From assembly GCA_002269645.1 (NCBI GenBank), contig NIVC01000724.1:64379-106630 (forward strand): 42,252 nt of DNA. Reading direction: 5' to 3'. The translations under genes and the position numbers were made by a program. Each line of letters begins with the position of its first letter. Position 1 is the stretch's first letter. The stretch is from Macrostomum lignano (Eukaryota). The notes under the pieces are model-generated. The model was not told the DNA's origin, ran no database searches, and worked only from the letters and a program-made list of their open reading frames with translations. Below are positions 6,877-39,693 of this stretch, in pieces.

Positions 6877-7120
6877 CTCACCCCTACCTCTCATATCTAG
6901 CACTCTATCTCTCACTCCTACCTCTCATATCTAGCACTCTATCTCTCACCCCTACCTCTCATATCTAGCACTCTATCTCTCACCCCTACCTCTCATATCT
7001 AGCACTCTATCTCTCACCCCTACCTCTCATATCTAGCACTCTATCTCTCACCCCTACCTCTCATATCTAGCACTCTATCTCTCACCCCTACCTCTCATAT
7101 CTAGCACTCTATCTCTCACC
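6877..7120. repeat. 34-bp minisatellite, ~7 copies
   Basis: Unit CTCACCCCTACCTCTCATATCTAGCACTCTATCT starts at 6877, 6911, 6945 ... 7081, 7115. Confidence 0.95.
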
Positions 7121-7879
7121 TATATCCACTCCATCTGACTCTATCTCTCATACACACGAGCGTATTTTCTTTTCTATCAAGCTAATTTGAGATGGCTACG
7201 TTATCCAACAGCCTCAACACTCCTGTGGCAGACAAAATATTTGAGCGAATTATTATTTTTTTCATCTTCTTTTCTAGCCTTGCCCAGAGAAAACTGACGA
7301 CCTAGAAAAAATGATGACTAAAATTGCTAGAACCAGATCAATCCAGATTGATCGACAGAAATCCTATCCTTTAGTGGCGACGCGACAAATTCCCAAGTAA
7401 AATGAATCCCCCAAGGCAGAGCAGCTCCTCGCGCATTCGTTATTAGTCGTTAGGATCATCTCCACATCAAACATTGCTACATCAAATTCGAAAATGTTCT
7501 CGGATTTTCTGAGCTTAAAAATTCGGAAACTGGAATGAACCGAGGCATCAAGTCTAAGATCTTTGGTTCTCACGAGAAGTTTGAGCAGTTCGGGGCCTCG
7601 AGTCAACAGATCGATGCCCACTTAAAGCAAACTGCTAGATCGAGGATAGAAACAAGTCTGAAAATTGTTCGAAACCGAAGAAAGTGTGTCATTTGCTTTA
7701 GAGTACTTTTGGCTTCCAAATTGCTCTTTTTAGTTGTAAGTTAGTTTTGTTTAGCCAAGTTTACGAGATAGTTTAGAGTATTCTGCATGCACAGCTTTAA
7801 TTTTTCGAGGTTTGTCTGAGAAGTTCTGTGTACTCGTATTTTGTTATAAGTTTTGTGGCTCAGGAAGTTGCACACTCTT

Positions 7880-8470
7880 TCGAGTGAAGAGTCTCCAAAT
7901 ATGCACCCTCAGCCTCCAGACTTCAGGCCTCCTGGCTCATTGTTCATCGCAGTGACGATGCTTTTCTTCTGTAGGCCCTCATCGATTCCTTGATGCGAGG
8001 AAAAAGGAGGAAGTCGAAAGGACTGACGTCCGGGTAGTACGGCGGATGCGGAAGAATTTCTAGCCATCCTTGATGACTCGATGATGCAGGCCTCTTGTCA
8101 CGAATGGCCCTTCAAACCTTCACAATGACTAACAAGTAGAAGTCGCCATTCACCGCCTGCCCTGCTGGCACTGGCTGGTTCAAGCGGCAAACTCTTGACG
8201 GTCAACGAAGGTGATGCGCTTGATCTTCAGCTGGGCCATGGACCGAGCGACCTCCCATCGATTCCGATGCTTCTTGCGCTTGATCTTCAGCTGGCCCATG
8301 GACCGAGCGACCTCCCATCGATTCCGATGCTTCTTGCGCTTGATCTTCAGCTGGGCCATGGACCGAGCGACCTCCCATCGATTCCGATGCTTCTTGCGCT
8401 TGATCTTCAGCTGGGCCATGGACCGAGCGATCTCCCATCGATTCCGATGCTTCTTGCGCTTCTAGCTTAA
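7880..8470 (-). mobile_element. Degraded mariner (DD34D-type) transposase remnant
   Basis: Minus-strand translation with stops and frameshifts gives ..LKIKRITFVDRQEF.. / AVNGDFYLLVIVKV*RAIRDKRP / GWLEILPHPPYYPDVSPFDFLLFPRIKESMR. These are the mariner TVN..YY..KRP and HPPYSPDLAPSDF.LF motifs in the correct order. Confidence 0.8.
8216..8461. repeat. 60-bp tandem repeat, 4 copies, inside the mariner remnant
   Basis: Lines starting 8221, 8281, 8341 and 8401 are near-identical. The minus strand reads (KRKKHRNRWEVARSMAQLKI)n. Confidence 0.95.
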
Positions 8471-9662: not shown

Positions 9663-9683
9663 TGAATTAATGCTTTAGATGTA

Positions 9684-10014
<331 letters not shown>

Positions 10015-11027
10015 CACTTCATATTACAGCAGTTTTAAGACTTTTGGTTTTAGACACGAATGTCGATTTTCGTGTGAAATGAGCAGCTACCTGCACTTTT
10101 AAATTCCACGTTTGATAAAGTAATCTGAGGAAAGAATGGAAGGGGTCTGTTTTTAGCTAGCGAAATCAACTTAGTCTCAATTTACCTAATTACGATTTCG
10201 ATGCATTGTTTTGAGCTGTTCAGTCAGTCGATGCAGAATTGATTACAGATAAACAGGGGTCTCAACTGGACAGTTTTGAGTAGCCAGCTAGCCAGCTATT
10301 GTTCATGAATATTCATATCATTTCTAACAACTTTCATAATTCCATAGCTAGTGCTGACGGTTTTTAGCTTGGGAGACTTGAGCTTCAGACAATGTTCTAC
10401 TCAGCACACGCAAGTCTAAGGCTCTGTCTCTATTCCCTATTGGCATTTCAGGCTGATCCGCATTCTGCTGAGGCAGAAGCAGAGAGAGAGAGAGGTAGAG
10501 AAGAGAAAGCAGAAAGACTCCCAAGTGCCGTTTCCTCGCTAGCACCTCTAATTTATTTCTGGCCCAATAATGTCAAGAGTAATTTGCTGGATTTTTAGCT
10601 ACTGTTTCTCCCAGCCTGTTCCGCCGTCTCTTTGAGTCTTTGCTCGAGGATTTGCGAGGAAAAACCAACTTTGCGACACAGTTTGTAATTTCCGTTGGCT
10701 TGGCTTGACTTGGCCCGGAATGCTGAACCTAAGCTTCTTAATTTTGAGTTCTAATTGTTTTCAGCTAGCTAGAAAAAAATCTTGCAAGCTAAAAAAGTTG
10801 GTGTAATTAACTAATTTATTTACTTCTTACATTTTTAGCAGTATTTCTTATGAAAATTTATGTACATCAATGGACATTAGTCAGTATAGCATGGAGTTAG
10901 GAAATAAAAGGCTATTTATTTACGAAAATGTTAATTAAAACTTCCTGGAAAGTAAAAAAAAATAAAACTCAGTGTTTTATCACTGTAGGCTCTGAAAAGA
11001 CAAATAAACACACCATAGGGTTAAATA

Positions 11028-11385: not shown

Positions 11386-12315
11386 ATAGGGTTAAATATG
11401 AAGCTATTTGTTTATAATCCTGTATTAAACGCGTTTATTGCATAATATGCCGATTTTATTTATTTAAGTTGTTTACATTTGCTTCGGACGAACCTAAATT
11501 TTTTATTCGTTTTGAAGAAACATTTACCATTGCAATAGGCGTTAATGAAAAAATCTTAGATATATAATTCTTCTCTCAGCTCAGTGGCCCTTTGCCGATT
11601 TTTTTGCTTACTCTTCCTATCTTTTGTTGCTGTTCGTCCTGGTGCCTGGCTCGGACGACACCAAGGCTGCTATTTTCTTGATATTATTAAAATAAGAAAT
11701 CCAATAAAAATATTGCATTTAATAATATACCGAATATATTTGCATCCGTATTAGCATATTGTGTCAATTAATTAATATTCAATAGTTCGATTGAATTAAG
11801 CACAAAATAAGTTATATTCAAGTGAACTTGACTTTACTGGAGCATGCAAAAATTTTAACAAAAGCAAATTTAAATTGATCACAGCTAACATAAAATAATT
11901 AAAAAATTCACAGAGTATGGGACTTATTACATAACCATTTTCACGTACTGATTTTAATGTTGCAAAAGTACATTTTAAACATAACAATAGCTATTCAATA
12001 AAGTCCAAAATTGTAAATTTAAAACGCCCCTATAGCAGAAAAATCAATTAGAAAGTTGAGAGAAATTTTAATTCTGTAAATACAGGTAAATAGAAATAGA
12101 AGTCAGCTCAAGGACTTAACAATTAACAAGTAAAAGGAATTGGACAGAGATTAGGAAAGTTTGTGAGGGAGCTAGACAGACTGATTCGTTATCAAATTAT
12201 TAGAGGTAAAAAGCAAGGAAACGAGATGGTGGAAAGGAGATAGATTAAATAGAATCTATCTATCTCTAGAGGGGAATAAATAAAAGAGAAGAAAGAATGA
12301 GGATGAAGCGGGTAG

Positions 12316-12625
12316 GGAGATGAAGGGAGGGAGATGAAGGGAGGGAGATGAAGGGAGGGAGATGAAGGGAGGGAGATGAAGGGAGGGAGATGAAGGAAGG
12401 GAGATGAAGGGAGGGAGGTGAAGGGAGTGAGATGAAGGGAGGAAGATGAAGGGAGGGAGATCATGGGAGCTGGGAGCTGAGGGAGAAAGATGAAGGGAGG
12501 GAGATGAAAGGAGGGAGATGAAAGGAGGGAGATAAAAAAGGATGAAGGGAGGGAGATTATTGGAAGAAGACGGAGGGACGGAGATGAAGAGAGGGAGATG
12601 AATGGGAAGGAGATGAAGGGAGGGA
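12316..12625. repeat. Purine-rich ~14-bp degenerate tandem repeat (GAGATGAAGGGAGG)n
   Basis: Direct inspection. Confidence 0.9.
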
Positions 12626-13720
12626 GAAAAAGAAAGAGAGATGAATGGATGGAGATGCATTGAAAGTGAGCAGAGTGTAGCAGATACAGATTTAGTGTAT
12701 AGGTTAAAAATAGAATAATTCCAGACTTTAAAGAAAACGCCACAAGTAGCAAATAGCTATTGAAAAAATTAGACTTGCAGAAATATCAATGTTAGCGGCA
12801 AACTTTGAGATTAAAATTGAACTGCTCATAATTTATGTACATTGTTATGAATCGCAAGGTAGTTTTAATGCAGATGTGAACAGTTTATCAAAAAAACAAA
12901 TATGAACTGACTTGCTGAGCTGTAGTTAAATGAATACAAATTAAAAACAGTTAAAATTTTGACAAATTGTAATTACAATATAGGATTATCGGCGCTAGTT
13001 AACGGATTTGAAATATAAATAAAATTTGCAATAACAATAGAATAATTTGGTAAATCACAAGACTGCAGACAAGTTGAATTTCTTGTGTCTGTGTTAAACA
13101 CAATCAGACAGTCGGTAAAGTACAAAGTGCTGTTCAATGCTTTTTTCTACTTGAGCCAGTCACTGCGGATTTCCAAACTGCTACAGACGAACCAACAGTA
13201 ATAGAGGGCATGAAGTCGCTGCTAATGGCTCCAAGTGAACCGTTGTCAAGCATCAGAAATGCATCAATGATCCCGAAACCCGATGGGGCTTTTAAACTTC
13301 TTTGTGGTCTTACGCATGTCGAACAGAAGGACTTCCGAAGGCGTTGGTTATGTATTTGCAGAGACAATCCTTAGCTTTGCAAAATGTATTCAGTCCAATA
13401 CGAAAGATGCCCCTTTTTCAATAGTAGGTTCTTTAGTCAGACTTAATCTTCAAAAATTAATAGTAACTTTCGATTTTTGCGTAAAGATTTAGAACATTCG
13501 AGTGCCATGCGATAATCGCGCGTTTTGGTAGGAAAAATGTATGATTTATTACCACTCCACTTTACGATCTACTTAAGAAGTTCTTAAGAAAAGTCAGAGC
13601 GAATGGACCTGAGACCTGGCATCCGCTGAGACAACAGTGCTCAAAGATCACCCAAAACACGGTCCCTTTGTGTTCAGTGCCCATGCAACTTCGGGTCACC
13701 AGCTGATCCGTCAGTCTCTC

Positions 13721-14207
13721 TCACGCCTTGTCCGCCTCCCCCGTGTCGATCTTGACAACCAGCACAAGATAGTAGAGCCAATAGAAACAGTTGTACAGCA
13801 GGAAGCAGGCCGGGAACAGGAACCGGCTGTAGGCGTCGATGTCAGAGTCCGGCGAGGGCACCGGCGAGGCCGTCTGAGCGGCACCGCCTCCGCTGGCGCC
13901 TTTGCCGCCCTCCTCTACGCTGACCACCAGAAGGTCTTCGAGCTCCTCTGGGAAACCCGGATAGCCATGCGCGTTGCCGGCGGAGGCTACGGCGGCTGAG
14001 CCGGGAGTCGGCAGGCCCGGTGGCGGACCCCGGATGACGGCGAGTCGCTGGAGTTCCGAGCGAACCACGCAGCGAATCTCCTGCTGCCAGTTCTCCATTT
14101 TGGTTCGACGGGCGCGGAATGAAGCGACGGCGAATTCGATCAGGGCGCCGATGACGAACATGATGCTGGCGATGATCCAGATGTCTATGGCCTTGATGTA
14201 CGCCACT
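13721..14207 (-). CDS. Cys-loop anion channel 3' (constant) exon: M2-M3 loop end, M3, intracellular loop, M4, stop
   Basis: Acceptor ..ccaccAG at 14210-14208 is followed by A GTG GCG TAC = (R)VAYIKAIDIWIIASIMFVIGALIEFAV (M3) ... DIDAYSRFLFPACFLLYNCFYWLYYL (M4), with TGA at 13721-13723. Phase 2 matches the donors of the three upstream exons. Confidence 0.92.
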
Positions 14208-16726
14208 CTGGTGGAGGAGGTATTGGGAGCTCTTAGCATCTGTGTGTTTGCATTGCGATTCGAATGATGGGTCGAAGTCTTCCAAATGAGATGAATAGCC
14301 TATTTTATTAGCCTCTCAGAGCATGTAGATGAATTTATGCGATGTATTATAATGTCTCAACTATAATCAATTAATAGTATTAACATTCCATCTCCAAATT
14401 TATGCAAATTAGTGCTGAAAAAGATTTTAATATCTTAGTTCAATTTTCAGACTCCGTCATCAGCTCATAGCCGATTTCCTTGCAGATTGTTGTGAATCCA
14501 GGGCCCCCGAAAGAAGAGCTGAACTGAATTCCCCTAGACCGAGCCGACGAGTGCCCTCATGCAGAATTCCCCATCAAGTATTCGAGTGAGTGGCTGCGTC
14601 GGGACTGCACCGTTCCCTCCTCTCTCCCCTACTCCTCTTGGATTCCTCAAGCCAAGATTTTGCAGTCCCTGCCAGTTGGTCTCTCCGCGGGTTTCCTGCT
14701 TCCAGGCAGGCACAGAAACTTGGATAGCCGCCCCTAGAAGTCCTTCGTTTCTCTCTGTCTCTCTCTCCTCTCTCCTCGGGCATTTCGGAATCGGAATTCG
14801 GGCTCTGGGGTGCCGGTGGGGCTGAGTTAGAATCGCAGGCCAGCATAGACTTCAGTCGAAATGTCGCTTCTGAGAGAGCTGAACTACCTTCGACTCATTT
14901 TCTCTACTCCCTCCCGCAGCCGTGCAGGCCACTGCTAACTCCACTCCTCGCTATGTCTAAAACTCCCCCTTTCAGATTCTCTCCCTCCGCTGTTCCTCAA
15001 ACCTGCGTTGAGTTCAAACTCCCCTCACACAGTCCAAGAAACGAGGTGGAGGGACTTCGGTCGAGGGTGGAAAGGGGGAAGATTTGAGACAGCGGGAGTC
15101 GCAGGCAGAGTCTCTGGAGAGCCGCTGACAGGATGACAAGAGTGAGTAGTCGAGGATTTTGTTTTGGTCAGGAGAGGCTCAACGTGAGATCGAACCGTAC
15201 CTCAATTCAAACTGAAAATTTCCGGCCTCAACTGCCACTCTCCAGCCATGATAACGCCTCTTCGGAATGCCAATTCTTGTAGAATCAACAAATATAAAAG
15301 CTCAAAATCTGACAACATCCCGTTTTTTAGCTCAAGACGTCAAGGCTTCTCTTGTTGTTGCCATTGGACACGATGCAGCTGCTATAGCTAAAATGTTAAA
15401 CACTGGTGAAGGGACTTTGGCAGAGCTATGGGCAGGGCAGAAACGATGCATCGGCATCAGCAAGTGAGTTATCGATCTGCTGTGAGCTGTCGTCAGCACA
15501 GGCAGTGAGGGAGAAGACACTGAGGGAGTGAGTAGGCGGAGCTGGAGGAGAGAAAGATGGGAGCGAGAGAGAGAAAAGAAAACTACAAAGCAGCATCCAG
15601 TAATTTTCAAAGCAACGATGCATCCCACGGCGCTATTAGCAATTTTAGGCCCTAATAATGAAGGCCGAAATCAGTCAAACACGACAGGGGCTCAGAAAGT
15701 AGCCGAGTCTACTCCTGACTTGCTGGAATGTTTACAAGGCTGATGAAATGTACTTTATTTGTTGTGCATATACATCCGCAGATTCGTTGGATCCGATTAT
15801 TTTTTGGCGAAAATTTTCCACTCCTGTAAACGAGAAGAAACAAGGCAGTTTTCTTGGCAAGATTCGGCCAGCCAGGGCTGCATGGTCAGGAGGTTGGGGG
15901 CGAAGGAGGTGAAGCCACGGGCCGGGGGAAGGCTGACGAGCTGACGAGCCGCTGCATGTCACATCCGCTTGACAACAGGGAGATCAGCCGGGGCGTCAGA
16001 AACAGCTACAACAACAGCAAAAGCAGAAGAAGCAGAACCAACAGCAACACCTAGAAGACTGGCAGAACTGTTCCTTGCCGCAACTCTCGCAATGCGCCTT
16101 CTTGCTTTGGAGAACGGTATAAGGGGACAGTGAAAAGAGGCAGGGGGAGAGGGCGTGGCTGATTGAGCCCCGGGGAGATACAGAGCCGCTGCAGTTGAAA
16201 GGCCTGTATAAACAGAGCCCCCGGGGTTCCCCTAGTTGGTCGTCCGGTCCATCAGGAGTGCGATTCTGTGAAAAAAGGGAAGCTGCTTTGCTTTGCCGAG
16301 ACATGCAGGGGCAGCGAGAGAGAATTTAAAAAAGAGGAATACAGACGCGAAAAAATATACAGACAGGGACCTTGGAATGGAGAGAAAGTGTAGGCGCACT
16401 GTTTCAGTTTTCGGAACTGGAACAGCTGCCGCTGCCTCAACTGATTGCCTCAGGGGGAGTAAGGGAGCTCTTGCTCTGGTCCGAGCTGACCACTGAGCTC
16501 AAAACCTTTCAGCCCTTCCCCCAGCCAAGAAAAGAGATTTTATTTTATAAAGCGAAAACACTTTAAAACGGTCTTTTTCCTATTTTCATAGAAACTGGCA
16601 TGCAGTTACTAAGCTGACTTGGGCGAGACGGCCGAGTGGGAACTCGAGAGCGCGGGGGGTTCTCTTCCACTTCAATCCAATTCCGCTGCTGCGTCAGCTC
16701 GAGAATGAGCATTCCCAGAGAAGCAA

Positions 16727-16757
<31 letters not shown>

Positions 16758-17624
16758 AAGGCCGGTTAAACACGCATCTCCTTAGGCTAAGCGGGCAGTC
16801 AGAGAAACTGGGAGGGAAAGCACTGCCAGCCTGGGGTCAATCAGGCTGAAAGCTGGACCCTGAATGTGAACAAGAGTGGACGGGAGTGCTGAGTCCACAT
16901 TGTGGTTGTGTGTGTACTGGGGGGGGAAGTTAGTTGATGCAGTGGAAAATCAGAGGGGAAATTTGTCGATTGGTCCGAAATTCGACAAATAACTTCAGAA
17001 TTCGGTTCTGGTTGGGACTTGCGTCGCTCTCTTTCCTAGCTCGCTGTGTTTGCACAAACTCCCGGATAGCAAACTCAAAAAGACGGTTGTTCTTCATCTT
17101 TTACTTCTTTCTGTCTCTGTCTTTTCTTTTGCTTTTTCATGCCAGCCTCCTTGGCACGTATTTTTGGGACTTTGGTGAATCAACAAATCATTTAGTATTT
17201 TCGGGTACGTGATGCCTTGCATAGAAAATGAAGAAAGAGTTTTTTGAGCAGCATCCACCATCACATATTTAACTTTCCGCATGCAGCTCAATACCCGAAG
17301 TCACTGCTCAGACTGTGATAGCAAAGTTTCGATCTTCTTGGTAATTTCTCTCCAAACTTGATATTTTTTATCGTCTAAAGCCCCTCCTAGAGTCTAAGAC
17401 TCAGTCAACCGCATCATCATTTCTCAGCTGAATCCCTTTTTTCCAGTTCTTGGTTATGCAAAGTAGGCGGCTGGTTTGCGAGATTTACGGCCGAGACGTG
17501 GCCAGATGATTGAGCAGAGAGGCAGCGACAATACGTCAAGGATATGGAAATGAGCATCGGGATACGATCCCACGGGCTCAATTTTCCCTAGAGGGATGGA
17601 CCCTCGTCTCCTGACTAGTCTCAC

Positions 17625-18640
17625 CTGGGCAAATTTCCCATCACGGTCGAAGCCTGAGTGAGAATGCCCAGCAGAGTGAGCAGTCCCAGAGTCACCCTGG
17701 CGGGCACGGCCTCAATGTTGACCCAGAAGTTCAGCCAGCTGACTGTCACGATGAGGATAGAAGGGATGTAGGTCCCAGCAAGGTAGCTGCTCAGCTGCCT
17801 CTCCAGTTTGAACTCCGCCTTGAGGCAGGCGTAGGCGCCAGTGCTGGTGGCGCTGCCTTTGGTGCAGTCGATGGTCTTTGCTTTGCCGGGCGTGTTGAAC
17901 TCGGCAATCTGCATTGAAGTGTCCAGCTCCACCGGTTGTTTGTCCTTGTCCTGCTTCCACTTGAACAGCAGATTCTTGGTTGTGTAACCGTAACTGCCGA
18001 TGTTGACGAAGCAGTTCTGTATGTCCATGGGGAATGTCTGCAGCTGCATCTGGCAGGAGAACTTCATGGTGATCTTCTGCGAGTACAGGATGTCACCGTT
18101 CGGACCCACTCGGATTAGATAATTTGGCTGCGTCATCTTGTGCAGGTAACCCTCTTTTCCGTTGCGAAAGAAAAGGTCTGGCAGCCACAGCTGCTCCTTC
18201 TTGGCCGGTATAGCGATGGAGTCATTGTAGAACTTGAACTGCGGGATATTCTCCCAGCTGAGCCGGTGATCGCGCCAGAACTGCCTCAGGTACATGTCCA
18301 AGCTGAACTCCATATTGATGACGTCGACCTTGTTGATGCTGAGAATTTTCATGTTCACGTCGACTTTAGTCGGTGGCTCAAACGGTTTTCCACCTTCAAC
18401 CAGCGGCGGCTGCGGCTTGCCGCCCATCGTATCAAAAACTTCCACTGGCCGCTGGTGCTTGTTGTAGTTGGTGAAGATTTTCTCAACAATGCGATCTACT
18501 ATGTTGGTGTAGTTGGAGGCCGTGGTGCCCGCCGAGGCCGGCAAGGGCTTCAGCAGCAGCAGCGGCAGCAGCGGCAGCAGCAGCGACAGCGAAAGCTTCG
18601 TGCACCGCCGGTTGCAGTCTGGCGCCGCCGCCGTCGCCAT
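17625..18640 (-). CDS. GluCl-like Cys-loop subunit 5' exon C: signal peptide, whole ECD, M1, M2
   Basis: ATG and hydrophobic leader; WLPDLFFRN; Cys-loop CQMQLQTFPMDIQNC; loop C CTKGSATSTGAYAC; PAR motif before M2 (anion-selective); ends NLP-AG|gtgag. Spliced to 13721-14207 it gives a 500-aa subunit. Confidence 0.93.
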
Positions 18641-20591
18641 GCCGACACTCTCCGCTCGCGGTTGTCCACTTCTGAGTCAGGCTGCGTTGCTGCTTGATTG
18701 TCGGACCCGAAGACTACCTGAATAGCCCTGGTTGATCCCAGAACATTTGATCGGGATTATGACGACGAGGTGATGGTGCTTGGAAGAAGACGGATGCGCA
18801 GTCGCGAGGCCTGCCAGCTTTAGGCGTTTTTAGAGGTCCGGGTAAGTTGAGTTCAGACGGGTACCGGATTGGCACGGTGACTGCCTGCCCCCACTCTGCC
18901 CCGAGTACGCTCGGCCAATGACGGGGCGACCTCTCTCCTTCCCTCAGAATACTGGATGAAAAAGAGGAGTATTTTACACTCGCTGATCTATTATTCGCCG
19001 TGGCTACAATTTTGTTATTTCTAATGAATCCCTGAACCCTTCTTCAGGCTTCAATGTGTCCACGCACCTATTAGAGATTTTATCAACTGCCTGTTTTATT
19101 CCCGCACTAACTTCAGCATCGCGCATCAGCACGACAAAAACCGCGTTGCTGCCATCGCTGTAGAAACGAACTTATGCGATGCTGTCTCTATCTGCACGAA
19201 CTGTTACAATAACACTGTATACAGTTTTATGTCCATCAAGCAACACCGAAGTGTCGCATCTGCTTCTAAGCCACCCGCGGCTCCGCAGCTTAGATTAGTT
19301 GAGATTAAGCGAGAGTTCGCGCAAAATAAAGAGGCCTGAATGACAGGTTAGAGGGAATTAACTAATATTCAGGCAATGGGACATTGTGTGCGCGCGTAAA
19401 TTAACGCGAGGAGAAGAAGCCCAGGTGCGCATGTGCGTGTGTGTGTGTGCAGCACAGGGTGTTACAAAAATGCTGTGTGGTCTTCTCACAGCAGCAGCAG
19501 CTGGTGTCAGTCACACAGCTGATGACAGGCGTAAAGTCAAGCCACTCAGGCTGAAATCACCTTTCCGGTCCAAGGGAGGAACAGAGGCGAGTATGAAGAG
19601 ATGGCTTGGCTGGAGGGACAGGCGTGGAACAAGGGAGAGAGGCAGGGTCGGGTTGAGAGACACGGCGCGGTGTATAGAATTCCGGTTGAGTTGATGCAGC
19701 TGCGTCAATGTTGGGGCCGCGAGGGAAGCTGAAGTCTTCTCTCCTAAAAGTTCCCGAAACTCCTGACATGTAAAAAAAGTATTACAGTGCACAGACAGAC
19801 GGCAGCACGATGGCTATGAATATAGAATCCATTGCCATTAAATGCGCGTTTCACTTGGTCAAGGGAGTTGCAATTTAGTATGAATAATTTGATACACGAG
19901 TCTGGCGAACCGGGAGCCAATGTGCGTGTTTATGCTAAGCATGGACTTCCGCCGAACCCTGCCTAGGAAGGGGTGGGCTCAGGCAAAAGTGTGCTCGACG
20001 GAGCCTTTGGACCAAGGAGACCTGAGACCTGGGACGCGGAACAGTTTTTTAAATTCTGGATCCATTTTCAGGCGTAATGGTTTCAAGCTCAATCGAATGT
20101 CCACCAAATAAACATTTAAAACATGTCAATAGGGGCTCGTAATACGAGCGTATAGTTAAAAAAATTTTAAATGCAAAACCCAAAAATACTGTATGTTCCC
20201 AAACTTCTGCCGAAACTGGCTCGGAGACTTTTCTCTTTAGAGCTTAATCAACTCCCGAAGCTTAGAGAGCAAAAATTTACAAGTTCAGTGAAGCCTATTT
20301 TTATATTTTACAAACTGACGTGCTAAATCACTACTTGTAAGTAGCATATGCAGTATCAGTAACCCTGGTTTCTACTAAATTTGATATCAATAAGGCCGAT
20401 CCGGAATTTAAGTCGAGAGGTTTTTCCAGCTCGCGGATCGCTTGGGTAGCTCAAGAGAGTCAAAGAATTCGAAGATCTGTGGCTCAGTTGTCCGTGGCAA
20501 TTCGAATGGGACACGGATAGCTACTTGTTGGTCCAAGTTACAAGCGTCTGAGCTGTTTAGGGATAGTTTGCATAGCTACGCCTATTCTTAC

Positions 20592-21331
20592 CTGGGCAGC
20601 CAGTTAGCAAAAGTACAAATGTGAGCCAAAATGCACAGCAGCGTTAGTAATAGCAGCAGAGCCAACAGGTAAGGGACAATGTGACGCTTCAGTTTGAATT
20701 CCACTTTCAAGCAAGGATAGAAACCGGATGAGGTAGCGCTGCCTCTTGAACAGTCGATGAGTTCCAGCTCAGCAGGCGCTTGAAACTCGCTAATCTGCAT
20801 CGCGGAGTCTAACTCAATAGCTTTTCTGTATTCTGTGTTGTGCCACCGCAGTAACTGACGATTCGTTGTGTGGCGATGGCTTCCGATGTGAATTCTACAA
20901 TTCTGCGTATCAAATGAAAATGTCTGCAGCTGCATGTGGCAGGAGAACTTCACTGTGGTCTTCTGCGAGTAGAGGACGTTCCCGTTGCGCTGAACCTTGA
21001 TGAGATGGTTCGGCTGAGCCATCTTGTGCTGGTAACCTTCGTTGCCGTTCCGGAAGAACACATCCGGCAGCCACAGCGTGTCCCTCGCGTTCGAAAAGTC
21101 GATGGGATCAAAATAAGATTGGTACTGCCGAAGACTGTCCCAAGCCAGTCGGCGGTCTTGCCAGAACATTCTCAGGAACATTTCGACACTGAACTCCATG
21201 CTGACTGGGTCAATGTTGCTGATTCTCAAAATCTTGATGGTCAAATTCACTTTGACAGGTCCATCTTGATACATTGGCACCTGTTCTTTGTAGTAATCAA
21301 ACTTCCTGTCGAAAATTGGTCCCGGTAACAA
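20592..21331 (-). pseudogene. Divergent GluCl-like 5' exon B: ECD intact, M1 missing, no clear signal peptide or ATG; possibly functional as an atypical isoform
   Basis: WLPDVFFRN, CHMQLQTFSFDTQNC and CSRGSATSSGFYPC are retained. KLKRHIVPYLLA runs directly into the M2-like LLLLLTLLCILAH..NWLP-AG|gtaag. An in-frame TGA lies immediately upstream of 21331. Confidence 0.75.
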
Positions 21332-21573
21332 TCAGGAAAAGATTTTTGTCCCACTTTCGTTCAGAGATTTCAAAACAATTTTTATGGATGATAATTGTAG
21401 AAAATTTGGCACTTGCAAGCGAAATGCTAGCTAATGCTGTGTCCCTAAAAGAATAAGCTGGTTGCTTTGGTCACACTGTCTTCTCTTTATATCTTCGAGC
21501 AATCATTGAGTTATGTGATGGAGCCTTAAGAGATGAGAGGATGCTGACTGACAAATCTGACTCATTCTCATTG

Positions 21574-22024
21574 CACAGGGGCGTCGCCACCGGACGGGGG
21601 GACATGAGGACATGCCCCCCCTCCAGTAAAAGCTATGGGGGGGACATGCTACCCCACCTTGTGACTCGTGGTTGAAATCAATAATTTTGCTTCAGAGCGG
21701 CAAAACATAGCGCCTACTGCGCCAAAATGAGTGCCTGCGGCGCCAAAATGAGTGCCTGCGGCGCTAAAATGAGTGCCTGCGGTGCAAAAATGAGTGCCTG
21801 CGGCGCTAAAATGAGTGCCTGCGGCGCTAAAATGAGTGCCTGCGGCGCCAAAATGAGTGCCTGCGGGGCTAAAATGAGTGCCTGCAGCGCTAAAATGAGT
21901 GCCTGCGGTGCAAAAATGAGCGCTGACGACACCGATTCTGAAAATAATATACATTTAGGAATTTATTCATGTACATGTTCATGTAGAATACACCCACCAT
22001 AAAACCCATGGCGGCGCCCCTGTG
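21574..22024. mobile_element. MITE-like element with ~15-bp TIRs and an internal 21-bp tandem array
   Basis: CACAGGGGCGTCGCC at 21574 and GGCGGCGCCCCTGTG ending at 22024 are inverted with 1 mismatch. About 10 copies of GCCTGCGGCGCTAAAATGAGT lie at 21712-21921. No TSD was found. Confidence 0.7.
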
Positions 22025-24663
22025 ACATTTCAGGTAGTGAATCCATTCCCAGGAAAGACTCCGGAAGGTGTTGTACTGGTGACTACGAAACTATATTAGT
22101 TATCGTTCATTCATTCAAAACAAGTCTGTCTTGTTTCTGTGTCAGCTCAAGTTGTTCGTTGATCCGTCACGGCAAGAATATTGCTGCATCGACAGTTATA
22201 AAAAAGGTGTAAATTCTGTTAGTCAGCTGCGCAGACTGACAAGCACACGGATTTAATTTGTTGAATTGGGTTCAAGTACAAACTTCTTCAAACTTCAGTG
22301 GACAGGCCGACAGCTGACTAGCAAACATTGGCTTATTTTTGTAGCCAAGTCTAGAATTTTCCTCATCAGAATACTGCGCAGTTCCACGAAAGAAGGACTT
22401 GTAAGTTAACTAATGAAGCTTCTAATAAACAATTTTTTGCCTGCGAATTTTTCCTACCATATTGTCCTTTCTGGGAGCCGGCTGCAGCTCAGTTGCTCGA
22501 CTGAGTAAATTCAATTTAAAGACGCTTGGGAAACATTTCTGCTTTTCGTCTGCTGGGTTGAGCAATCCGAATCTGCGACAGAATCGACAGGACGCGAGTG
22601 AACAACCATGGCTCATCGACTTCTTCATCCGGGCAGCTAATTAGAAAAGAAGAATGCCAGGCCTCCGTGTCTGGGGTTCAGATCCAGTTATGGCCTGATT
22701 GAACAAGTTCTACTCATTTACTGTAAGTTTGACTACATTTTTACCAAATCCGTGGGGCTGGACTTACTAATCAAAAATGCATGCCATTCTGAGCCAAACT
22801 CTGCCCCCCAGTAGCCCCTTTAGCAAATCGAAAACCAACTGTAACTCGAGACTAATTTCCATGGACTGCATGGCTAGAATTGGTAAATTGACACCGTATG
22901 CACGGCGACTTGAGCTGTGCGTTGCTCAAGGCATAAGAGGAACCTTTTTTATACACAGCAGGGTCCTAGCTGTGTTCCTGTCAAGACAAGCAATAGTTAT
23001 CACTAACTAAGGGGCTGCTATAGAGAGGATCGATTCAAAAATACTGTAATTAAGCGAGTCTATTCGGTAAGACTTAGCAACTAAGCAACTAAGACAGGGA
23101 ATCTATCCACTCAATTGATAGAACGCGCCTCTTTCTGCTTTTCTGCCAGCCAGAGACGGTTTCGATTGATTTTACGATCTTTTGCAACCGTCTGCTCCTG
23201 CGCTTGAGCTTAGATGCATTATAGCAGAAAGATCTTCTGAGGAGGTATGAGGGGAGGGCATGATGGCCCATTGGAGTGGAAAAGAATTAGCCTTTGATTA
23301 CAGGCCGAGCCACCGATCTCATCGTCACTGAATGCACGGCTCGCTCACGTAGTACGGTACAGGTATTGGCCAAGCGATTTTCGCTGTTTAGTACTATACT
23401 AGCAAGATATGATTACATGTTCCCATATTGTAGAGTATAATAACGGTATTATGGCTTGTTAAGCTACAGAGGCTGCAATCTAAGATCCCCGAATCCCACT
23501 ATCTCCCTATCCTTTCATCAATGGGCTGCGTGTCCATCAATGACAGCTGTTTCTACTGCAGGTTTACAGAGAACATTTCGTTCTTAGGGTTCGATTGTAA
23601 GGCAGAAAGTCGCACGATGTCTGATCACTAATACACGCACCTGTCCCATCTCTGTCAATACATTTAATGTGCACCCCAAGTCAGCAGAGACCGCCGAGTT
23701 TCATTCCATTTGGTAGCGAATATCGTCATGCAGTAATGCAGTTGTCAATGTTGACACAGTGGGGTTAGGTTAGTGCAAACAGCTGGATCGGGGGGGGGCA
23801 TATGTGAGTTTTAAAACCTAATATAAGACAGCAGAAGTTGAAGGTAGCTCATGCACTCCCTATTAGCTACCATCGCAATTCTTTACTCTTACGAGTGCCT
23901 CGTTAGTCTCGGAATGAGACTTTGAGTAGAAAAAAAGTTCAGAGAGTCACGCCGCAAAGGAAGTGAGACAGCCCCCCTGCTGCTAGCCCAGCCTCTGCTG
24001 TCATGGTGGGCGCGCAGCTTTCTTCTTCTCTTTAGTCAAAGTTTAGTCGCAAAAAACGTTAAGAGGCAACGAGGAATGCTCTGACTGCCTGGAGAGTGTG
24101 GCGATGCGTTGAAAACAAGGCCAACCTCCCCCCTCTCTCTCTAATCCCTTCTCCCCAGGCCTGGCAATTAGTGTGAGCAGGCCCGTTGCAACTTTCGGAC
24201 TTTTCTCTGTGAGTCTCTGAGTGACCAGCTGCTTGGAGCAGAGCACGATGAACTGTGCACGTCTGGCGTCTGTGTGTGCGTGCGTGCCCAGAGCCGAGAG
24301 AGACGTGACGCACCAACAAGGGGCACGCGAAACGAAAGCGAAAGTTGAGGAGAGAAAGAGGAGCTCGCTATATAGCAAGAGAAAGAAAGCAAAAGATGTC
24401 GCCGAAGATTTCCTCAAAGTTTCTCTCCGGAGAGGAAGACTTGAAGTTTGGGGATTTGAGTCGAGAGTGCGGGAAGAAAAAAGGTAACGAAGATCGGGAG
24501 AGAGACCTGAGGGGCAGGCCTGAACAGGTCAAGAAGGCCTTCTCTAATTGCGATCAGATTGCCGCCATGTGAGCCTTCCGTTGTGTATTACTTATTCAAG
24601 CAAATTAAAAATAGCACCGAGGTGTCGACTGAGGGCGCATGACTCAGCGAGGCTGACTCTTAC

Positions 24664-25610
24664 CTGGGCAAGTTGTTGATGACTGACATGCCCTGGGTTA
24701 GGATGCCGAGCAGAGTGAGCACGCCGAGGGACACGCGAGCCGGTATGGCCTCAACGCTGATCCAGAAGTTCAGCCAGCTGACTGTCACGATGAGAATCGC
24801 GGGAATGTAGGTGCTGGACAGGTAACTGCCGAGCTGCCTCTCGAGGTTGAAGACAACCAACAGGCAGGCGTAGGCGCCGGTGCTGGTGGCGCTGCCCTTC
24901 GTGCAGTCGATGGTCTCGGCGCTGCTCGGCGTGTTAAACTCCGAGATTTGCATTGTGTCCAGCTCCACTGAGGCTTTATTCTCGTCTCGTTTCCATCGAA
25001 ACAGCAGGTTTCGAGTTGTGTATCCGTAGCTGCCAATATTCACAGTGCAGGTCTGCGTGTCCATCGGGAACGTCTGCAGCTGCATCTGGCAAGCGTACCG
25101 CATTGTAACCTTCTGCGAGTACAGGATGTGCCCGTTCGGCTCAACTCGGATTAGATAATTTGGCTGCGTCATCTCGTGCAGGTAGCCTTGCTTTCCATTG
25201 CGAAAGAAAAGATCTGGCAGCCACAGTTGCTCCTTCTTGGCCGGTATAGCGATGGAGTCATTGTAGAACTTGAACTGCGGGATATTCTCCCAGCTGAGCC
25301 GGTGATCGCGCCAGAACTGCCTCAGGTACATGTCCAGCGTGAACTCCATATTGATGACGTCGACCTTGTTGATGCTGAGAATTTTCATGTTCACTAACAC
25401 GAGTGTCGGGTCTTCCTCCAGTTTGCCGTCCTTGTTCTGCCTGCTGGCCGGCACGGGTCTCTGGTGCTTGTTGTAGTTGGTGAAGATGTGCCCTACGATT
25501 CGGTCCACAATGTTGGTGTAGTTCGGCTTCATTCCAGCTTGGCCTGATGCGGTCCCGAGCATCAGGAGAACCGAAGCGGCAACTAGTGTTGCTAGGCTCA
25601 GCGGCTGCAT
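24664..25610 (-). CDS. GluCl-like Cys-loop subunit 5' exon A: signal peptide, whole ECD, M1, M2
   Basis: ATG at 25610 (MQPLSLATLVAASVLLMLGTASG leader); WLPDLFFRN; CQMQLQTFPMDTQTC; PAR motif; ends NLP-AG|gtaag. Spliced to 13721-14207 it would give 477 aa. Confidence 0.92.
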
Positions 25611-28701: not shown

Positions 28702-30400
28702 TGTCTAGAATCTCACCTTTATACTGGGAGTCTAGAATCTCACCTTTATACTGGGAGTCTAGAATCTCACCTTTATACTGGGAGTCTAGAATCTCAACCT
28801 TAGACTGGGAGTCTAGAATCTCACCTTTATACTGGGAGTCTAGAATCTCACCTTTATACTGGGAGTCTAGAATCTCACCTTTATACTGGGAGTCTAGAAT
28901 CTCAACCTTAGACTGGGAGTCTAGAATCTCACCTTTATACTGGGAGTCTAGAATCTCACCTTTATACTGGGAGTCTAGAATCTCACCTTTATACTGGGAG
29001 TCTAGAATCTCAACCTTAGACTGGGAGTCTAGAATCTCACCTTTATACTGGGAGTCTAGAATCTCACCTTTATACTGGGAGTCTAGAATCTCACCTTTAT
29101 ACTGGGAGTCTAGAATCTCACCTTTATACTGGGAGTCTAGAATCTCACCTTTATACTGGGAGTCTAGAATCTCACCTTTATACTGGGAGTCTAGAATCTC
29201 ACCTTTATACTGGGAGTCTAGAATCTCACCTTTATACTGGGAGTCTAGAATCTCAACCTTAGACTGGGAGTCTAGAATCTCAACCTTAGACTGGGAGTCT
29301 AGAATCTCACCCTTAGAAGATTGGGAGTCTAGAATCTTACCCTTAGACTGGGAGTCTAGAATCTCACCCTTAGACTTGAAGTCTAGAATCTCACCTTTAT
29401 ACTGGGAGTCTAGAATCTCACCTTTATACTGGGAGTCTAGAATCTCACCTTTATACTGGGAGTCTAGAATCTCACCCTTAGACTTGAAGTCTAGAATCTC
29501 ACCTTTATACTGGGAGTCTAGAATCTCAACCTTAGACTGGGAGTCTAGAATCTCACCTTTATACTGGGAGTCTAGAATCTCACCTTTATACTGGGAGTCT
29601 AGAATCTCACCTTTATACTGGGAGTCTAGAATCTCACCTTTATACTGGGAGTCTAGAATCTCACCTTTATACTGGGAGTCTAGAATCTCACCTTTATACT
29701 GGGAGTCTAGAATCTCACCTTTATACTGGGAGTCTAGAATCTCACCTTTATACTGGGAGTCTAGAATCTCACCTTTATACTGGGAGTCTAGAATCTCACC
29801 TTTATACTGGGAGTCTAGAATCTCACCTTTATACTGGGAGTCTAGAATCTCACCTTTATACTGGGAGTCTAGAATCTCACCTTTATACTGGGAGTCTAGA
29901 ATCTCAACCTTAGACTGGGAGTCTAGAATCTCACCTTTATACTGGGAGTCTAGAATCTCACCTTTATACTGGGAGTCTAGAATCTCACCTTTATACTGGG
30001 AGTCTAGAATCTCACCTTTATACTGGGAGTCTAGAATCTCACCTTTATACTGGGAGTCTAGAATCTCAACCTTAGACTGGGAGTCTAGAATCTCAACCTT
30101 AGACTGGGAGTCTAGAATCTCAACCTTAGACTGGGAGTCTAGAATCTCAACCTTAGACTGGGAGTCTAGAATCTCAACCTTAGACTGGGAGTCTAGAATC
30201 TCACCCTTAGAAGATTGGGAGTCTAGAATCTTACCCTTAGACTGGGAGTCTAGAATCTCACCCTTAGACTTGAAGTCTAGAATCTCACCCTTAGAAGATT
30301 GGGAGTCTAGAATCTTACCCTTAGACTGGGAGTCTAGAATCTCAACCTCAGACTGGGAATCTAGAATCTCACCCTTAGATGATTTGGAATCTAAAATCTC
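28702..30400. repeat. 27-bp minisatellite, roughly 63 units, with variant units; open as a 574-aa ORF (28701-30425)
   Basis: Unit TGGGAGTCTAGAATCTCACCTTTATAC (WESRISPLY) with variants STLD, PLED and PLDLK. Confidence 0.95.
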
Positions 30401-34002: not shown

Positions 34003-34800
34003 TTTAGCCATGGTCTGGCTTTTGCCACAACAGTATGATTTAGCTGTGGTCCAGCTTTTGCCTCAACAGTATGATTTAGCTGTGGTCCAGCTTTTGCCTC
34101 AACAGTATGATTTAGCTGTGGTCCAGCTTTTGCCTCAACAGTATGATTTAGCTGTGGTCCAGCTTTTGCCTCAACAGTATGATTTAGCTGTGGTCCAGCT
34201 TTTGCCCCAACAGTTTTTAGCCGTGGTCCGGCTTTTTTGCCTCAGCAGTATGATTTAGCTGTGGTCTAGCTTAAAACTGCATCAACAGTGATTTAGCTAT
34301 AGTCCAGGCTTAACTACCTCAACGATGATTTAGCTATAGTCAAGGCTTAACTGTCTCAACAGTAATTTTAGCTGTTGTCCAGACTTAACTGCCTCAACAG
34401 TGATTTTAGCTGTGGTCCAGGCAACTGTCTCAACAGGGATTTAGCTGTAGTCCGATTAGCTTAACTGTCCAGTTATTTAGCTGTGAGCCAAGCAGCAGCA
34501 CCCGTCTCAACAGTGAGAATTAGCTATGGTCAGCTTTACCTCAACTGTGATTTGGCTGCTGTGGTCTAGCATAACTGACTCAACAGTAATTTTAGCTGTA
34601 GTCGTCCAGCTTAACCACCCGTCCAGTTTTATAACCATGGTCCAGCTTAACCACCGTCTCAACGTACAGCGATTTAGTCGTGGTCCAGCTTAACCGTCTC
34701 AACGTACAGTGATTTAGCCATGGGTCTAGTAGCAATTAACCGTATCAATAGTGATTTAGCCGTGGTCCAGCTTAACTGTCTCAACACAGTAATTTAGCTT
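34003..34800. repeat. 36-bp tandem array decaying into degenerate units
   Basis: GATTTAGCTGTGGTCCAGCTTTTGCCTCAACAGTAT is near-perfect to ~34200, then progressively diverged. Confidence 0.9.
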
Positions 34801-36711: not shown

Positions 36712-36921
36712 CAAAATTTTTGACTAATTTTATCCAATTTTTAACTAACTTATTCCACTATATTTATCAAATTTTTGGCTAGGGAAATATTATTTTTTAG
36801 GGAAAAGCTCAAAACATTGTTTGCTACTCCTTGTACGCTAACCAGGTTTTGTAATTTAATATTAGAATTTACGATAGTATAGTCATGTTTAACTTTTCTT
36901 ATTATTTATTTTCCGTTTTAG

Positions 36922-37479: not shown

Positions 37480-37702
37480 ACTTAACAAGTAAACAATTGC
37501 TGTCAAATCGCAGTTGCGATGCATTCTTTTACAAACATTTTGTCTTTTTTTATTTATTTACCAATTGTTTTCTCTAATAGTAAACGTGTCAGCTATATCT
37601 ATAACTAACCAAATCATCATTTTTCTTACAGCCGCAAATGACAAACCGGATCATCTATTAATATTATGCTCGATACGCTCGTTGTCGAGCTAGGTGCACA
37701 CA

Positions 37703-38440: not shown

Positions 38441-38472
<32 letters not shown>

Positions 38473-38810: not shown

Positions 38811-39095
38811 TATGCTCTGATCTCTTTTGTTGTACAAAGTAATAGCATGCTATAGAAGACTGTAACCCATCATTAATTTTTTCATTGATCATTATTTACA
38901 ATAAATAAATGATACCGGCATTCGTTTAAATTATAATTTTAGCACTTTTTTGTGTTTAATTATTTGAAAAAGTATATTTTTTATAGTTAGATTCTCAAGA
39001 CTAAGCTTGTGTTTGTAGTAGACGTAAATGTAGTGCTATCGTTCATGTTTCAAGAAAAAAAACTTTTTTTTAAACTTTCAGCTACAAGAATCGAC

Positions 39096-39657: not shown

Positions 39658-39693
39658 TTTTAAAAATTTATGCCTAAAATATATGTTGTAAAA

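What the first reader, a model, noticed from the sequence alone, without database searches (positions are those of the whole stretch)
13721..25610. Protocadherin-style variable-exon/constant-exon architecture for a pentameric chloride channel
Seen: three large tandem minus-strand exons (A 24664-25610, B 20592-21331, C 17625-18640) each encode a Cys-loop ligand-binding domain up to M2. All three end at the identical phase-2 donor LP-AG|gt(a/g)ag. Only one M3-M4 exon (13721-14207, KAIDIW..YSRFLFP) was found downstream, and its acceptor phase fits all three. A and C each have their own ATG and signal peptide. Known: clustered protocadherins and UGT1A use this layout with alternative promoters, whereas nematode avr-14 uses the reverse (shared ECD, alternative TM region). 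Inference: one locus makes subunits with different binding sites and pore-lining M2 helices (C: VTLGLLTLLGILTQ; A: VSLGVLTLLGILTQ) but a common M3, cytoplasmic loop and M4. I am not aware of this layout being described for Cys-loop receptors.
Basis: partly seen in the sequence, partly recalled or inferred. Interest (0 to 1): 0.92.

Follow-up and report, generated by a model that had tools for sequence, protein, structure and literature searches.

The report
Two-headed flatworm chloride-channel gene
A flatworm glutamate-gated-chloride-channel-like gene carries two intact, interchangeable 5' exons (plus one decayed one), each encoding the outer domain and the pore helix. All feed a single shared 3' exon, so one locus should make two different channel subunits, a layout I could not find described for this receptor family.

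Summary
Minus-strand exons A (24664-25610), B (20592-21331) and C (17625-18640) all end at LP-AG|GTRAGA in phase 2. Sequence and profile searches find one M3-M4 exon in the window (13721-14207).

A and C are complete: start codon, signal peptide, ligand-binding domain, M1 and M2. B is not. It has no start or signal peptide and lacks M1 plus half of M2. It has also lost the Cys-loop proline and the loop-B aromatics.

Three Macrostomum lignano loci show the same A'-C'-D' layout with the same splice phase. A GenBank protein from its transcriptome-derived annotation (PAA70662.1, 474 aa) is exactly A'+D', spliced over an intact C' exon.

A-type and C-type exons are each under purifying selection (dN/dS 0.16 and 0.21; 0.09 and 0.04 in M1-M2). 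Their type-specific M1-M2 residues are conserved. The cores of their ligand-binding domains are homogenised by gene conversion.

So the variable-exon/constant-exon reading is supported for two exons. C-to-D splicing, separate promoters and any RNA in this genome remain inferred. The 'different binding sites' claim is weak, because the stable differences lie in M1-M2. I rate it a new variant of a known kind, of moderate to high interest.

The parts
24664..25610 (-). Variable exon A (A-type): ATG, signal peptide, whole ligand-binding domain, M1, M2; phase-2 donor CCCAG|GTAAGA at 24664/24663
   Evidence: ORF and donor. Family ECD-M2 profile 421 bits. 81-84% aa identity to the M. lignano A-type exons P0004/P0044. 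dN/dS against A' is 0.16. The matching M. lignano exon is spliced to D' in P0261.
20592..21331 (-). Exon B: decayed third variable exon. Same donor (CCCAG|GTAAGA), but no start codon or signal peptide, 27-residue in-frame loss of M1 through the first half of M2, and loss of the Cys-loop Pro and the loop-B aromatics
   Evidence: No counterpart in L001, L005 or L006. The reading frame is still open and dN/dS is about 0.15-0.27 at saturated dS.
17625..18640 (-). Variable exon C (C-type): ATG, signal peptide, ligand-binding domain with a longer N-terminal insert, M1, M2; phase-2 donor CCCAG|GTGAGA at 17625/17624
   Evidence: 430 bits. 78% aa identity to M. lignano C'. dN/dS against C' is 0.21 overall and 0.04 in M1-M2.
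13721..14207 (-). Constant exon D: rest of the M2-M3 linker, M3, short cytoplasmic loop, M4, stop TGA (13721-13723). Acceptor cctcctccaccag|A at 14208/14207
   Evidence: the only M3-M4 match in the window, E=4e-43. 75% aa identity to M. lignano D', dN/dS 0.145.
14208..24663 (-). Intron removed when A joins D (10,456 nt; contains B and C). The C-to-D intron is 14208-17624 (3,417 nt)
   Evidence: Follows from the exon ends. The corresponding M. lignano introns that contain C' are 7,212-13,879 nt in the P0261 gene models.
25228..25394 (-). Gene-conversion tract in exon A. The counterpart in exon C is 18192-18358. 164 of 167 nt are identical (one codon differs); the rest of the exon alignment is about 80% identical
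   Evidence: A longer tract exists between A' and C' in M. lignano (8 mismatches in 472 nt).

Best explanation
The region is one gene for an anion-selective Cys-loop receptor subunit of the flatworm glutamate-gated chloride channel (SmGluCl-like) clade. The source is probably a Macrostomum species.

The gene has two working alternative first coding exons, A and C. Each supplies its own start codon, signal peptide, complete ligand-binding domain, M1 and the pore-lining M2. Each ends at the same phase-2 donor inside the M2-M3 linker. Either one is joined to a single downstream exon D (M3, cytoplasmic loop, M4).

A transcript that starts at A must run through B and C and splice A's donor directly to D's acceptor, treating B and C as intron. 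A transcript that starts at C splices C to D. The result is two subunits:
- Same in both: agonist-contact loops A-C, M3, intracellular loop and M4.
- Different: N-terminal insert, pre-M1/M1, M1-M2 loop and M2 (2' Ser vs Thr; 15'-19' GMSVI vs ASTVM). These are the residues that shape the pore and the gating interface.

B is a third exon of the same kind that has decayed. The variable exons exchange sequence by gene conversion across the ECD core, while selection keeps their M1-M2 identities apart.

Shown: the anatomy; its conservation in a second genome; selection on both exon types; an RNA-derived A'+D' product in M. lignano.
Inferred: A-to-D and C-to-D splicing in this genome; separate promoters; glutamate as the agonist.
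For: - Anatomy and splice phase.
- A single M3-M4 exon by tblastn and by profile HMM in the window, L001, L005 and L006.
- The junction is continuous with GlyR alpha1 across the M2-M3 linker.
- Family: best hits are flatworm GluCl/GlyR-like proteins including SmGluCl-2. Pfam LBD and TM domains. PAR motif, C-x13-C Cys-loop, loop-C Cys pair, and the loop-A Arg (FFRNGK) that PMC4338433 links to glutamate recognition in lophotrochozoan GluCls.
- M. lignano loci L001, L006 and L005 have A'-C'-D' with donors CTGCCCAG|GTAGG and acceptor ..cag|GGTTGCC in the same phase. Only the exons align to the window, at 77-80% nt.
- P0261 (PAA70662.1/PAA71747.1, 474 aa) equals A'+D' exactly at all three loci, with C' inside the removed intron. 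The GenBank annotation is built from RNA-seq and transcriptome assemblies.
- P0004 shows the A' donor also being used with a cryptic acceptor inside a retroelement.
- dN/dS: A-A' 0.16, C-C' 0.21, D-D' 0.145 at dS about 0.8-1.1. In M1-M2, A-A' and C-C' are each 92% identical (dN/dS 0.09 and 0.04), against 75-80% between types.
- 11 type-diagnostic positions, 9 of them in pre-M1 to M2.
- Under neutral drift at d>=0.25 an exon of this size stays open in <=0.2% of simulations.
Against: - No RNA evidence from this genome. Exact look-ups of the window's A+D and C+D products found nothing.
- No C'+D' product is on record for M. lignano. The only C' model (261 aa, L001) is frameshifted. C-to-D therefore rests on conservation alone.
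- Several M. lignano A-type models (P0004, P0044, P0262, P0263) end in non-M3 tails.
- No shared promoter motif lies upstream of A, C, A' or C', so independent promoters are unproven.
- Gene conversion could in principle help preserve an unused exon, although it cannot explain the conserved type-specific M1-M2 residues.
- Flanking genes are not syntenic between the window and the M. lignano loci, so strict orthology is unproven.
Confidence: 0.75

Rival explanations
1. Only the distal exon is used (A+D, as annotated in M. lignano). C is an unexpressed internal duplicate that looks intact because gene conversion from A keeps refreshing it.
For: A'+D' is the only full-length product on record. 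Exact look-ups of C'+D' found nothing. The one C' model is frameshifted. Conversion tracts cover much of the ECD.
Against: C-type-specific residues in pre-M1, the M1-M2 loop and M2 are conserved between C and C' (92% aa, dN/dS 0.04 at dS about 1) and differ from A-type, so conversion from A cannot be maintaining them. C and C' keep their own ATG, hydrophobic leader and the phase-2 donor. Neutral drift would have closed the frame. The protein index used here misses known relatives, so absence from it is weak evidence.
Confidence: 0.1
2. Only the proximal exon is used in this genome (C+D). A and B are silent partial duplicates left by tandem duplication of the 5' exon.
For: C is the exon nearest to D. 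B is clearly decayed. There is no RNA evidence from this genome.
Against: The A-type exon is spliced to D' in the M. lignano transcriptome-derived annotation. A vs A' dN/dS is 0.16 overall and 0.09 in M1-M2. A-type-specific residues are shared by three A-type exons (A, P0004, P0044). The reading frame is intact over 315 codons.
Confidence: 0.05
3. Same two products but a different choice mechanism. One promoter upstream of A makes a long pre-mRNA. Either A is cis-spliced to D, or a spliced leader is trans-spliced just upstream of C and C is then cis-spliced to D.
For: 38.8% of M. lignano genes are SL trans-spliced, and about 7% of assembled transcripts are multi-gene precursors (PMC5730564). 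The gene names Mlig000841.g2/.g5 and Mlig026840.g2 look like several genes per transcriptional unit; that reading of the names is my inference. No promoter-like conserved element was found upstream of C or C'.
Against: No strong polypyrimidine-AG acceptor is obvious just upstream of the C ATG. An acceptor there would also invite A-to-C cis-splicing. No SL-containing read data were available to test this.
Confidence: 0.1

Closest known systems
Macrostomum lignano BOX15_Mlig000841g2/g5 (PAA70662.1 / PAA71747.1; P0261) and the loci L001, L005, L006
   Same: Same exon types in the same order (A-type, C-type, one M3-M4 exon). Same phase-2 donor inside LP-R and same acceptor before VAYIKAIDIW. 75-84% aa identity per exon. 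A'+D' is annotated as a 474-aa protein.
   Different: No B-type exon. Introns and flanking genes are unrelated to the window. L001 carries a retroelement between A' and C' that captures the A' donor (P0004). L005 has the C'-D' unit duplicated. The GenBank record calls it a 'hypothetical protein'. I found no paper that describes the alternative-exon layout.
Clustered protocadherins and UGT1A (variable first exons spliced to constant exons; from general knowledge)
   Same: Tandem paralogous large first exons, each with its own start, signal peptide, extracellular part and membrane-spanning part. All share one downstream acceptor. Upstream exons splice over downstream ones. Gene conversion occurs among variable exons. 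A relic variable exon is present.
   Different: Only two working variable exons, not about 10-60. Each variable exon here also carries two of the four membrane helices, including the pore lining. No conserved promoter element was found. Promoter choice is untested.
C. elegans unc-49 (and nematode avr-14): one Cys-loop receptor locus that makes several subunits
   Same: A single locus yields distinct subunits of a pentameric chloride channel by joining a shared block to alternative blocks (unc-49: PMC6920096).
   Different: The polarity is reversed. In unc-49 the N-terminal extracellular block is shared and the alternative 3' blocks carry binding-site parts and all the transmembrane segments. 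Here the 5' blocks (ECD+M1+M2) alternate and M3-loop-M4 is shared.
Schistosoma mansoni SmGluCl-2 / SmGluCl-3 (functionally characterised flatworm GluCls)
   Same: Same clade (about 50% identity). Same loop-A Arg, PAR motif and double Cys-loop. SmGluCl-2.1 and SmGluCl-3 form glutamate-gated homomers (PMC3757052).
   Different: SmGluCl-2 and -3 are each encoded in a single exon. There is no M2-M3 intron, and no alternative ECD exons are reported.

Membership tests
Cys-loop (pentameric) ligand-gated ion channel subunit | Neur_chan_LBD followed by Neur_chan_memb; C-x13-C Cys-loop; four membrane helices | tested here: met
   A+D: PF02931 E=4.5e-45 and PF02932 E=3e-28. CQMQLQTFPMDTQTC. M1-M3 plus M4 align to GlyR alpha1. 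C+D is equivalent. B+D fails: it lacks M1 and has no PF02932 match.
Anion-selective GlyR/GluCl-type subunit | P-A-R at M2 -2' to 0'; second disulphide pair in loop C | tested here: met
   A has ..EAIPARVSLG.. and C has ..EAVPARVTLG... Both have CTKGSATSTGAYAC.
Lophotrochozoan 'S-like' glutamate-gated chloride channel (SmGluCl clade) | Clade membership, the amino-acid-agonist motif, and the loop-A arginine that binds the glutamate alpha-carboxyl (PMC4338433) | tested here: met
   Best hits are flatworm GluCl-like proteins including SmGluCl-2. LWLPDLFFRNGK (loop-A Arg), YLRQ (loop D), GSYGYT (loop B) and STGAYAC (loop C) are present in A and C. B keeps the loop-A Arg but has GSHRHT in loop B.
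Lophotrochozoan 'S-like' glutamate-gated chloride channel (SmGluCl clade) | Gated by L-glutamate, conducts chloride | not testable with these tools
   Needs electrophysiology of A+D and C+D.
Variable-exon/constant-exon gene (clustered protocadherin / UGT1A type) | Tandem paralogous first exons, each with its own start codon and leader, all in the same splice phase as one downstream acceptor | tested here: met
   A and C meet this. It is conserved in three M. lignano loci. B shares the donor but has no start.
Variable-exon/constant-exon gene (clustered protocadherin / UGT1A type) | Each variable exon is actually spliced to the constant exon, with upstream exons skipping downstream ones | tested here: inconclusive
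   A-type: yes in M. lignano (P0261 = A'+D' over C'). C-type: no product on record. This genome: no RNA data.
Variable-exon/constant-exon gene (clustered protocadherin / UGT1A type) | A separate promoter in front of every variable exon; cell-specific choice | not testable with these tools
   No conserved upstream element was found, which neither supports nor excludes separate promoters. Needs CAGE, 5' RACE or single-cell data.
unc-49 / avr-14 type multi-subunit Cys-loop locus | Shared N-terminal extracellular exons joined to alternative C-terminal (transmembrane) exon blocks | tested here: not met
   Here the transmembrane tail (M3-M4) is the shared part and the ECD+M1+M2 block alternates (unc-49 layout from PMC6920096). 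It resembles unc-49 in outcome (several subunits from one locus), not in layout.

The most novel reading that the evidence does not exclude
Macrostomum flatworms make two distinct chloride-channel subunits from one gene by choosing between first exons. Each first exon encodes the signal peptide, the entire ligand-binding domain, M1 and the pore-lining M2. Both isoforms share one M3-cytoplasmic loop-M4 exon. The alternative exons evolve in concert across the binding domain, while selection holds their pore and gating-interface residues apart. This is the mirror image of unc-49/avr-14 and has not been described for any Cys-loop receptor.
Probability: 0.65. Interest if true: 0.7.

Novelty: new variant of a known kind. 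Interest (0 to 1): 0.62.

Why it matters
Subunit diversity in pentameric ligand-gated channels normally comes from separate genes, small cassette exons or RNA editing. The known 'one locus, several subunits' cases (unc-49, avr-14) share the ligand-binding end and vary the channel end.

Here the channel's pore helix and outer domain vary, while the cytoplasmic loop and M3/M4 stay fixed. These fixed parts handle trafficking, clustering and lipid or modulator contacts.

That gives a natural experiment on which half of a subunit sets assembly partners, conductance and pharmacology. M2 2' and 15' are classic blocker and modulator positions. It also gives a compact model of alternative first-exon choice and of concerted evolution under divergent selection.

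Practically, it explains why flatworm gene predictors emit truncated 'LBD-only' channel models: they miss the distant shared exon.

Tried and rejected
1. Protein search with exon D alone returned one unrelated fragment, and the search with exon B returned nothing. Both missed proteins already known to match (P0001-P0004). The word-indexed search gives weak negatives, so I did not count these as absence of transcripts.
2. A full HMMER search of the 50%-identity representatives with D found no Macrostomum-level match. Relatives are collapsed into clusters, so this is uninformative about isoforms.
3. Exact-product look-ups for the A and C open reading frames, for window A+D and C+D, and for four versions of M. 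lignano C'+D': none on record.
4. Search for a shared promoter or conserved upstream element among A, B, C, A' and C', using shared k-mers and local alignment against shuffles: nothing above the null.
5. Conserved intronic elements between the window and M. lignano: none; only the exons align.
6. Flanking synteny: only simple-repeat hits. The glutaredoxin and aldolase neighbours of the M. lignano loci are not in the window.
7. Looked for a second, diverged M3-M4 exon with a family profile: none. This rejects 'each ECD exon has its own hidden tail' within the sequence available.
8. Considered assembly artefact. Rejected because four independently assembled loci in two genomes share the layout.
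9. Considered A-to-B in-frame splicing through a possible acceptor before B. Rejected as a functional product on topology grounds (five helices) and because B's homology extends upstream of that site.
10. Literature searches for alternative first exons in Cys-loop or pentameric receptors found nothing.
11. Loci for P0044 and P0104 could not be fetched.
Full report
OBSERVATION

On the minus strand there are three long open exons: A 24664-25610, B 20592-21331 and C 17625-18640. There is also one shorter exon, D 13721-14207.
- A, B and C end CCC AG|GTAAGA, CCC AG|GTAAGA and CCC AG|GTGAGA.
- D begins after cctcctccaccag| with an A that completes the split Arg codon.
- Each join therefore reads ...NLPR-VAYIKAIDIW... 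and stays in frame to the stop at 13721.
- The A+D product aligns across the junction with zebrafish GlyR alpha1 (..SLPKVSYVKAIDIWM..) without a gap.

WHAT THE PIECES ARE

A+D has Pfam Neur_chan_LBD (E=4.5e-45) followed by Neur_chan_memb (E=3e-28). It also has a C-x13-C Cys-loop, the second Cys pair in loop C, and P-A-R at the start of M2. Together these mark it as an anion-selective Cys-loop receptor subunit.

The best database relatives are flatworm GluCl/GlyR-like proteins, including S. mansoni SmGluCl-2 at about 50% identity. The closest, at 73-84% identity, are from Macrostomum lignano.

A and C carry the loop-A arginine (LWLPDLFFRNGK) and the aromatic/Thr motif that Lynagh et al. link to glutamate recognition in lophotrochozoan GluCls (PMC4338433). 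Glutamate is therefore the likely agonist; this is an inference. SmGluCl-2.1 and SmGluCl-3 are glutamate-gated, and the SmGluCl-2 and -3 genes are each single-exon (PMC3757052). The M2-M3 intron seen here is thus not a feature of the whole family.

ONE TAIL ONLY

- tblastn at E=10 finds a single M3-M4 exon in the 42 kb.
- A profile HMM built from the M3-M4 regions of 103 family members was run with all filters off on every stop-to-stop frame. It hits only D (E=4e-43); the next hit has E>2.
- A matching ECD-to-M2 profile finds exactly A, B and C.
- There are 16.6 kb upstream of A and 13.7 kb downstream of D without another piece of this gene.

EXON B IS NOT LIKE A AND C
- It has no ATG or hydrophobic leader: maximum 12-residue Kyte-Doolittle mean 0.31, against 2.45 and 2.52.
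- It has an in-frame gap of 27 residues that removes M1, the M1-M2 loop and the first half of M2.
- Its profile score is 246 bits against about 420-430.
- It has FSFD for the near-invariant Cys-loop FPMD, and GSHRHT for loop-B GSYGYT.
- B+D would have three helices and the wrong topology.
- No B-type exon exists at the M. lignano loci.

I read B as a relic. Its frame is still open over 246 codons, and its dN/dS against A or C is 0.15-0.27 at saturated dS. It was probably functional for most of its history, and when it decayed is unexplained.

THE SAME LAYOUT IN A SECOND GENOME

P0004 (BOX15_Mlig026840g2) led to M. lignano locus L001. P0261 then led to L006 (an inverted copy on the same contig) and L005 (another contig). 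All three carry an A-type exon, then a C-type exon, then one D-type exon. In L005 the C'-D' unit is duplicated.
- Donors are CTGCCCAG|GTAGGC (A') and CTGCCCAG|GTAGGG (C').
- The acceptor is ..ttc(a/g)cag|GGTTGCCTACATC.
- The phase matches the window.
- Between the window and these loci only the exons align (77-80% nt). Introns and flanks do not.

The layout has therefore persisted through roughly one synonymous substitution per site.

RNA-DERIVED SUPPORT

The M. lignano GenBank annotation is built from StringTie/TACO and de novo transcriptome assemblies, not from ab initio prediction (PMC5730564).
- Its protein P0261 (PAA70662.1/PAA71747.1, 474 aa) is, residue for residue, A' (10001-10944 in L006) joined to D' (18157-18637). 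The intact C' exon (15670-16664) lies inside the removed 7.2-kb intron. The same product fits L005 and L001.
- P0004 shows the same A' donor joined to a cryptic acceptor inside a retroelement that sits between A' and C' in L001.
- I found no C'+D' product. The only C' model is frameshifted.
- The protein index demonstrably misses known relatives, so this absence is weak evidence.

SELECTION

Nei-Gojobori estimates between the window and L001:

| Comparison | Whole exon dN/dS | M1-M2 (last 60 codons) aa identity | M1-M2 dN/dS |
|---|---|---|---|
| A vs A' | 0.16 | 92% | 0.09 |
| C vs C' | 0.21 | 92% | 0.04 |
| D vs D' | 0.145 | n/a | n/a |
| A vs C | 0.21 | 75% | 0.20 |
| A' vs C' | 0.36 | 80% | 0.33 |

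- Across three A-type and two C-type exons there are 11 positions fixed within a type and different between types. Nine of them lie in pre-M1 (QLG/QLS, YLS/YLA), the M1-M2 loop (FWIS/FWVN) and M2 (2' S/T; 15'-17' and 19' in GMSVI/ASTVM).
- The ECD core is nearly identical between the two exons of the same genome: 164 of 167 nt in the window (25228-25394 vs 18192-18358), and 8 mismatches in 472 nt in M. lignano. Yet it differs between genomes. This is gene conversion.
- Conversion cannot create conserved type-specific residues, so both exon types are individually maintained.
- Under neutral substitution at d>=0.25, exons of this size stay open in <=0.2% of simulations.

MECHANISM

The best-supported reading is one gene with two working alternative first exons and one shared last coding exon. 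It gives two subunits:
- Same in both: agonist-contact loops A-C, M3, cytoplasmic loop and M4.
- Different: the N-terminal insert, pre-M1/M1, the M1-M2 loop and pore-lining M2.

How the choice is made is not shown. The rivals are:
- Separate promoters (the protocadherin/UGT1A logic). This is the default.
- A single upstream promoter with spliced-leader trans-splicing at C. This is a live alternative because SL trans-splicing and multi-gene precursors are common in M. lignano.
- Use of only one exon type. For A this is contradicted by P0261 and by selection. For C it is contradicted by selection only.

COMPARISON AND NOVELTY
- By layout it works like clustered protocadherins and UGT1A, but with only two live variable exons and no promoter evidence.
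- By outcome it resembles unc-49 and avr-14. Those share the N-terminal block and vary the transmembrane blocks (PMC6920096). This locus is the reverse.
- Full-text searches found no description of alternative first exons of this kind in Cys-loop or pentameric receptors. The M. lignano product is deposited only as a hypothetical protein.
- I rate it a new variant of a known kind, with moderate to high interest.

LIMITS
- No RNA from this genome was available.
- C-to-D joining is inferred.
- The source organism is not identified; a Macrostomum species is inferred from 75-84% identity to M. lignano exons.
- Orthology versus old paralogy of the window and the M. lignano loci is unresolved, because the flanks are not syntenic.

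Noticed in passing
window 35881-41852 (+ strand): A run of long ORFs on one strand. It includes a dUTPase (39009-39578, PF00692 E=2e-29), a parvovirus-type phospholipase A2-like domain (39670-40113, PF08398 E=3e-9) and an ORF with a Walker-A motif (40110-40805, AGPSNSGKT). Several ORFs of 276-334 aa have no Pfam, PHROG or PDB match. It looks like an integrated virus-like or large mobile element that may run off the window end.
   Followed up: partly
window 1964-4581 (- strand): Two adjoining long ORFs (450 and 424 aa) in a 64.5% GC island, against about 44% in the flanks. Each contains a similar '...NNG(R/A)QFARWC(R/K)...' motif. No Pfam or PHROG match. Probably a neighbouring gene on the same strand downstream of exon D.
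   Followed up: partly
window 28703-30377; also 21712-21920, 12314-12657, 9680-10015, 6873-7150, 8215-8461, 34003-34453: Many minisatellites, including a 27-nt unit repeated about 62 times upstream of exon A and a 21-nt unit repeated 10 times inside the A-B interval. The M. lignano A'-C' interval also holds large minisatellites (L001 13105-15367).
   Followed up: no
L001 16061-19961: A retroelement sits between A' and C'. By inspection it has a gag-like ORF, a reverse-transcriptase ORF with YLDD, and an ORF with a tyrosine-recombinase-like HGLRRGGAT motif (DIRS-like). It is flanked by a >=1.6-kb duplication of the C' upstream region (15373-16128 = 21240-21995). A cryptic acceptor at about 16312 in its gag ORF captures the A' donor and produces the truncated protein P0004.
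   Followed up: partly
L005 10201-13330 and 16158-19308; L001 vs L006 on NIVC01001215.1: In L005 the C'-D' unit is tandemly duplicated, and the gene model joins A' to the second D'. L001 and L006 are near-identical inverted copies about 10 kb apart on one contig, each with glutaredoxin and aldolase neighbours. These are either recent duplications or assembly of haplotypes in this hidden polyploid.
   Followed up: no
window 20592-21331 (exon B): Although B has lost its start, M1 and key motifs, it keeps a 246-codon open frame and the exact donor. Its dN/dS is about 0.15-0.27 against A and C. The decay may be recent, or B may have some residual use.
   Followed up: partly
proteins P0044, P0262, P0263 (M. 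lignano, UniRef only): A second, more divergent A-type exon exists in M. lignano. It is 83-84% identical to both A and A', and its M1-M2 differs from the window's A at one residue. Its models all end in non-M3 tails straight after ..NNLP. Its locus could not be retrieved, so whether it belongs to another variable/constant cluster is unknown.
   Followed up: partly
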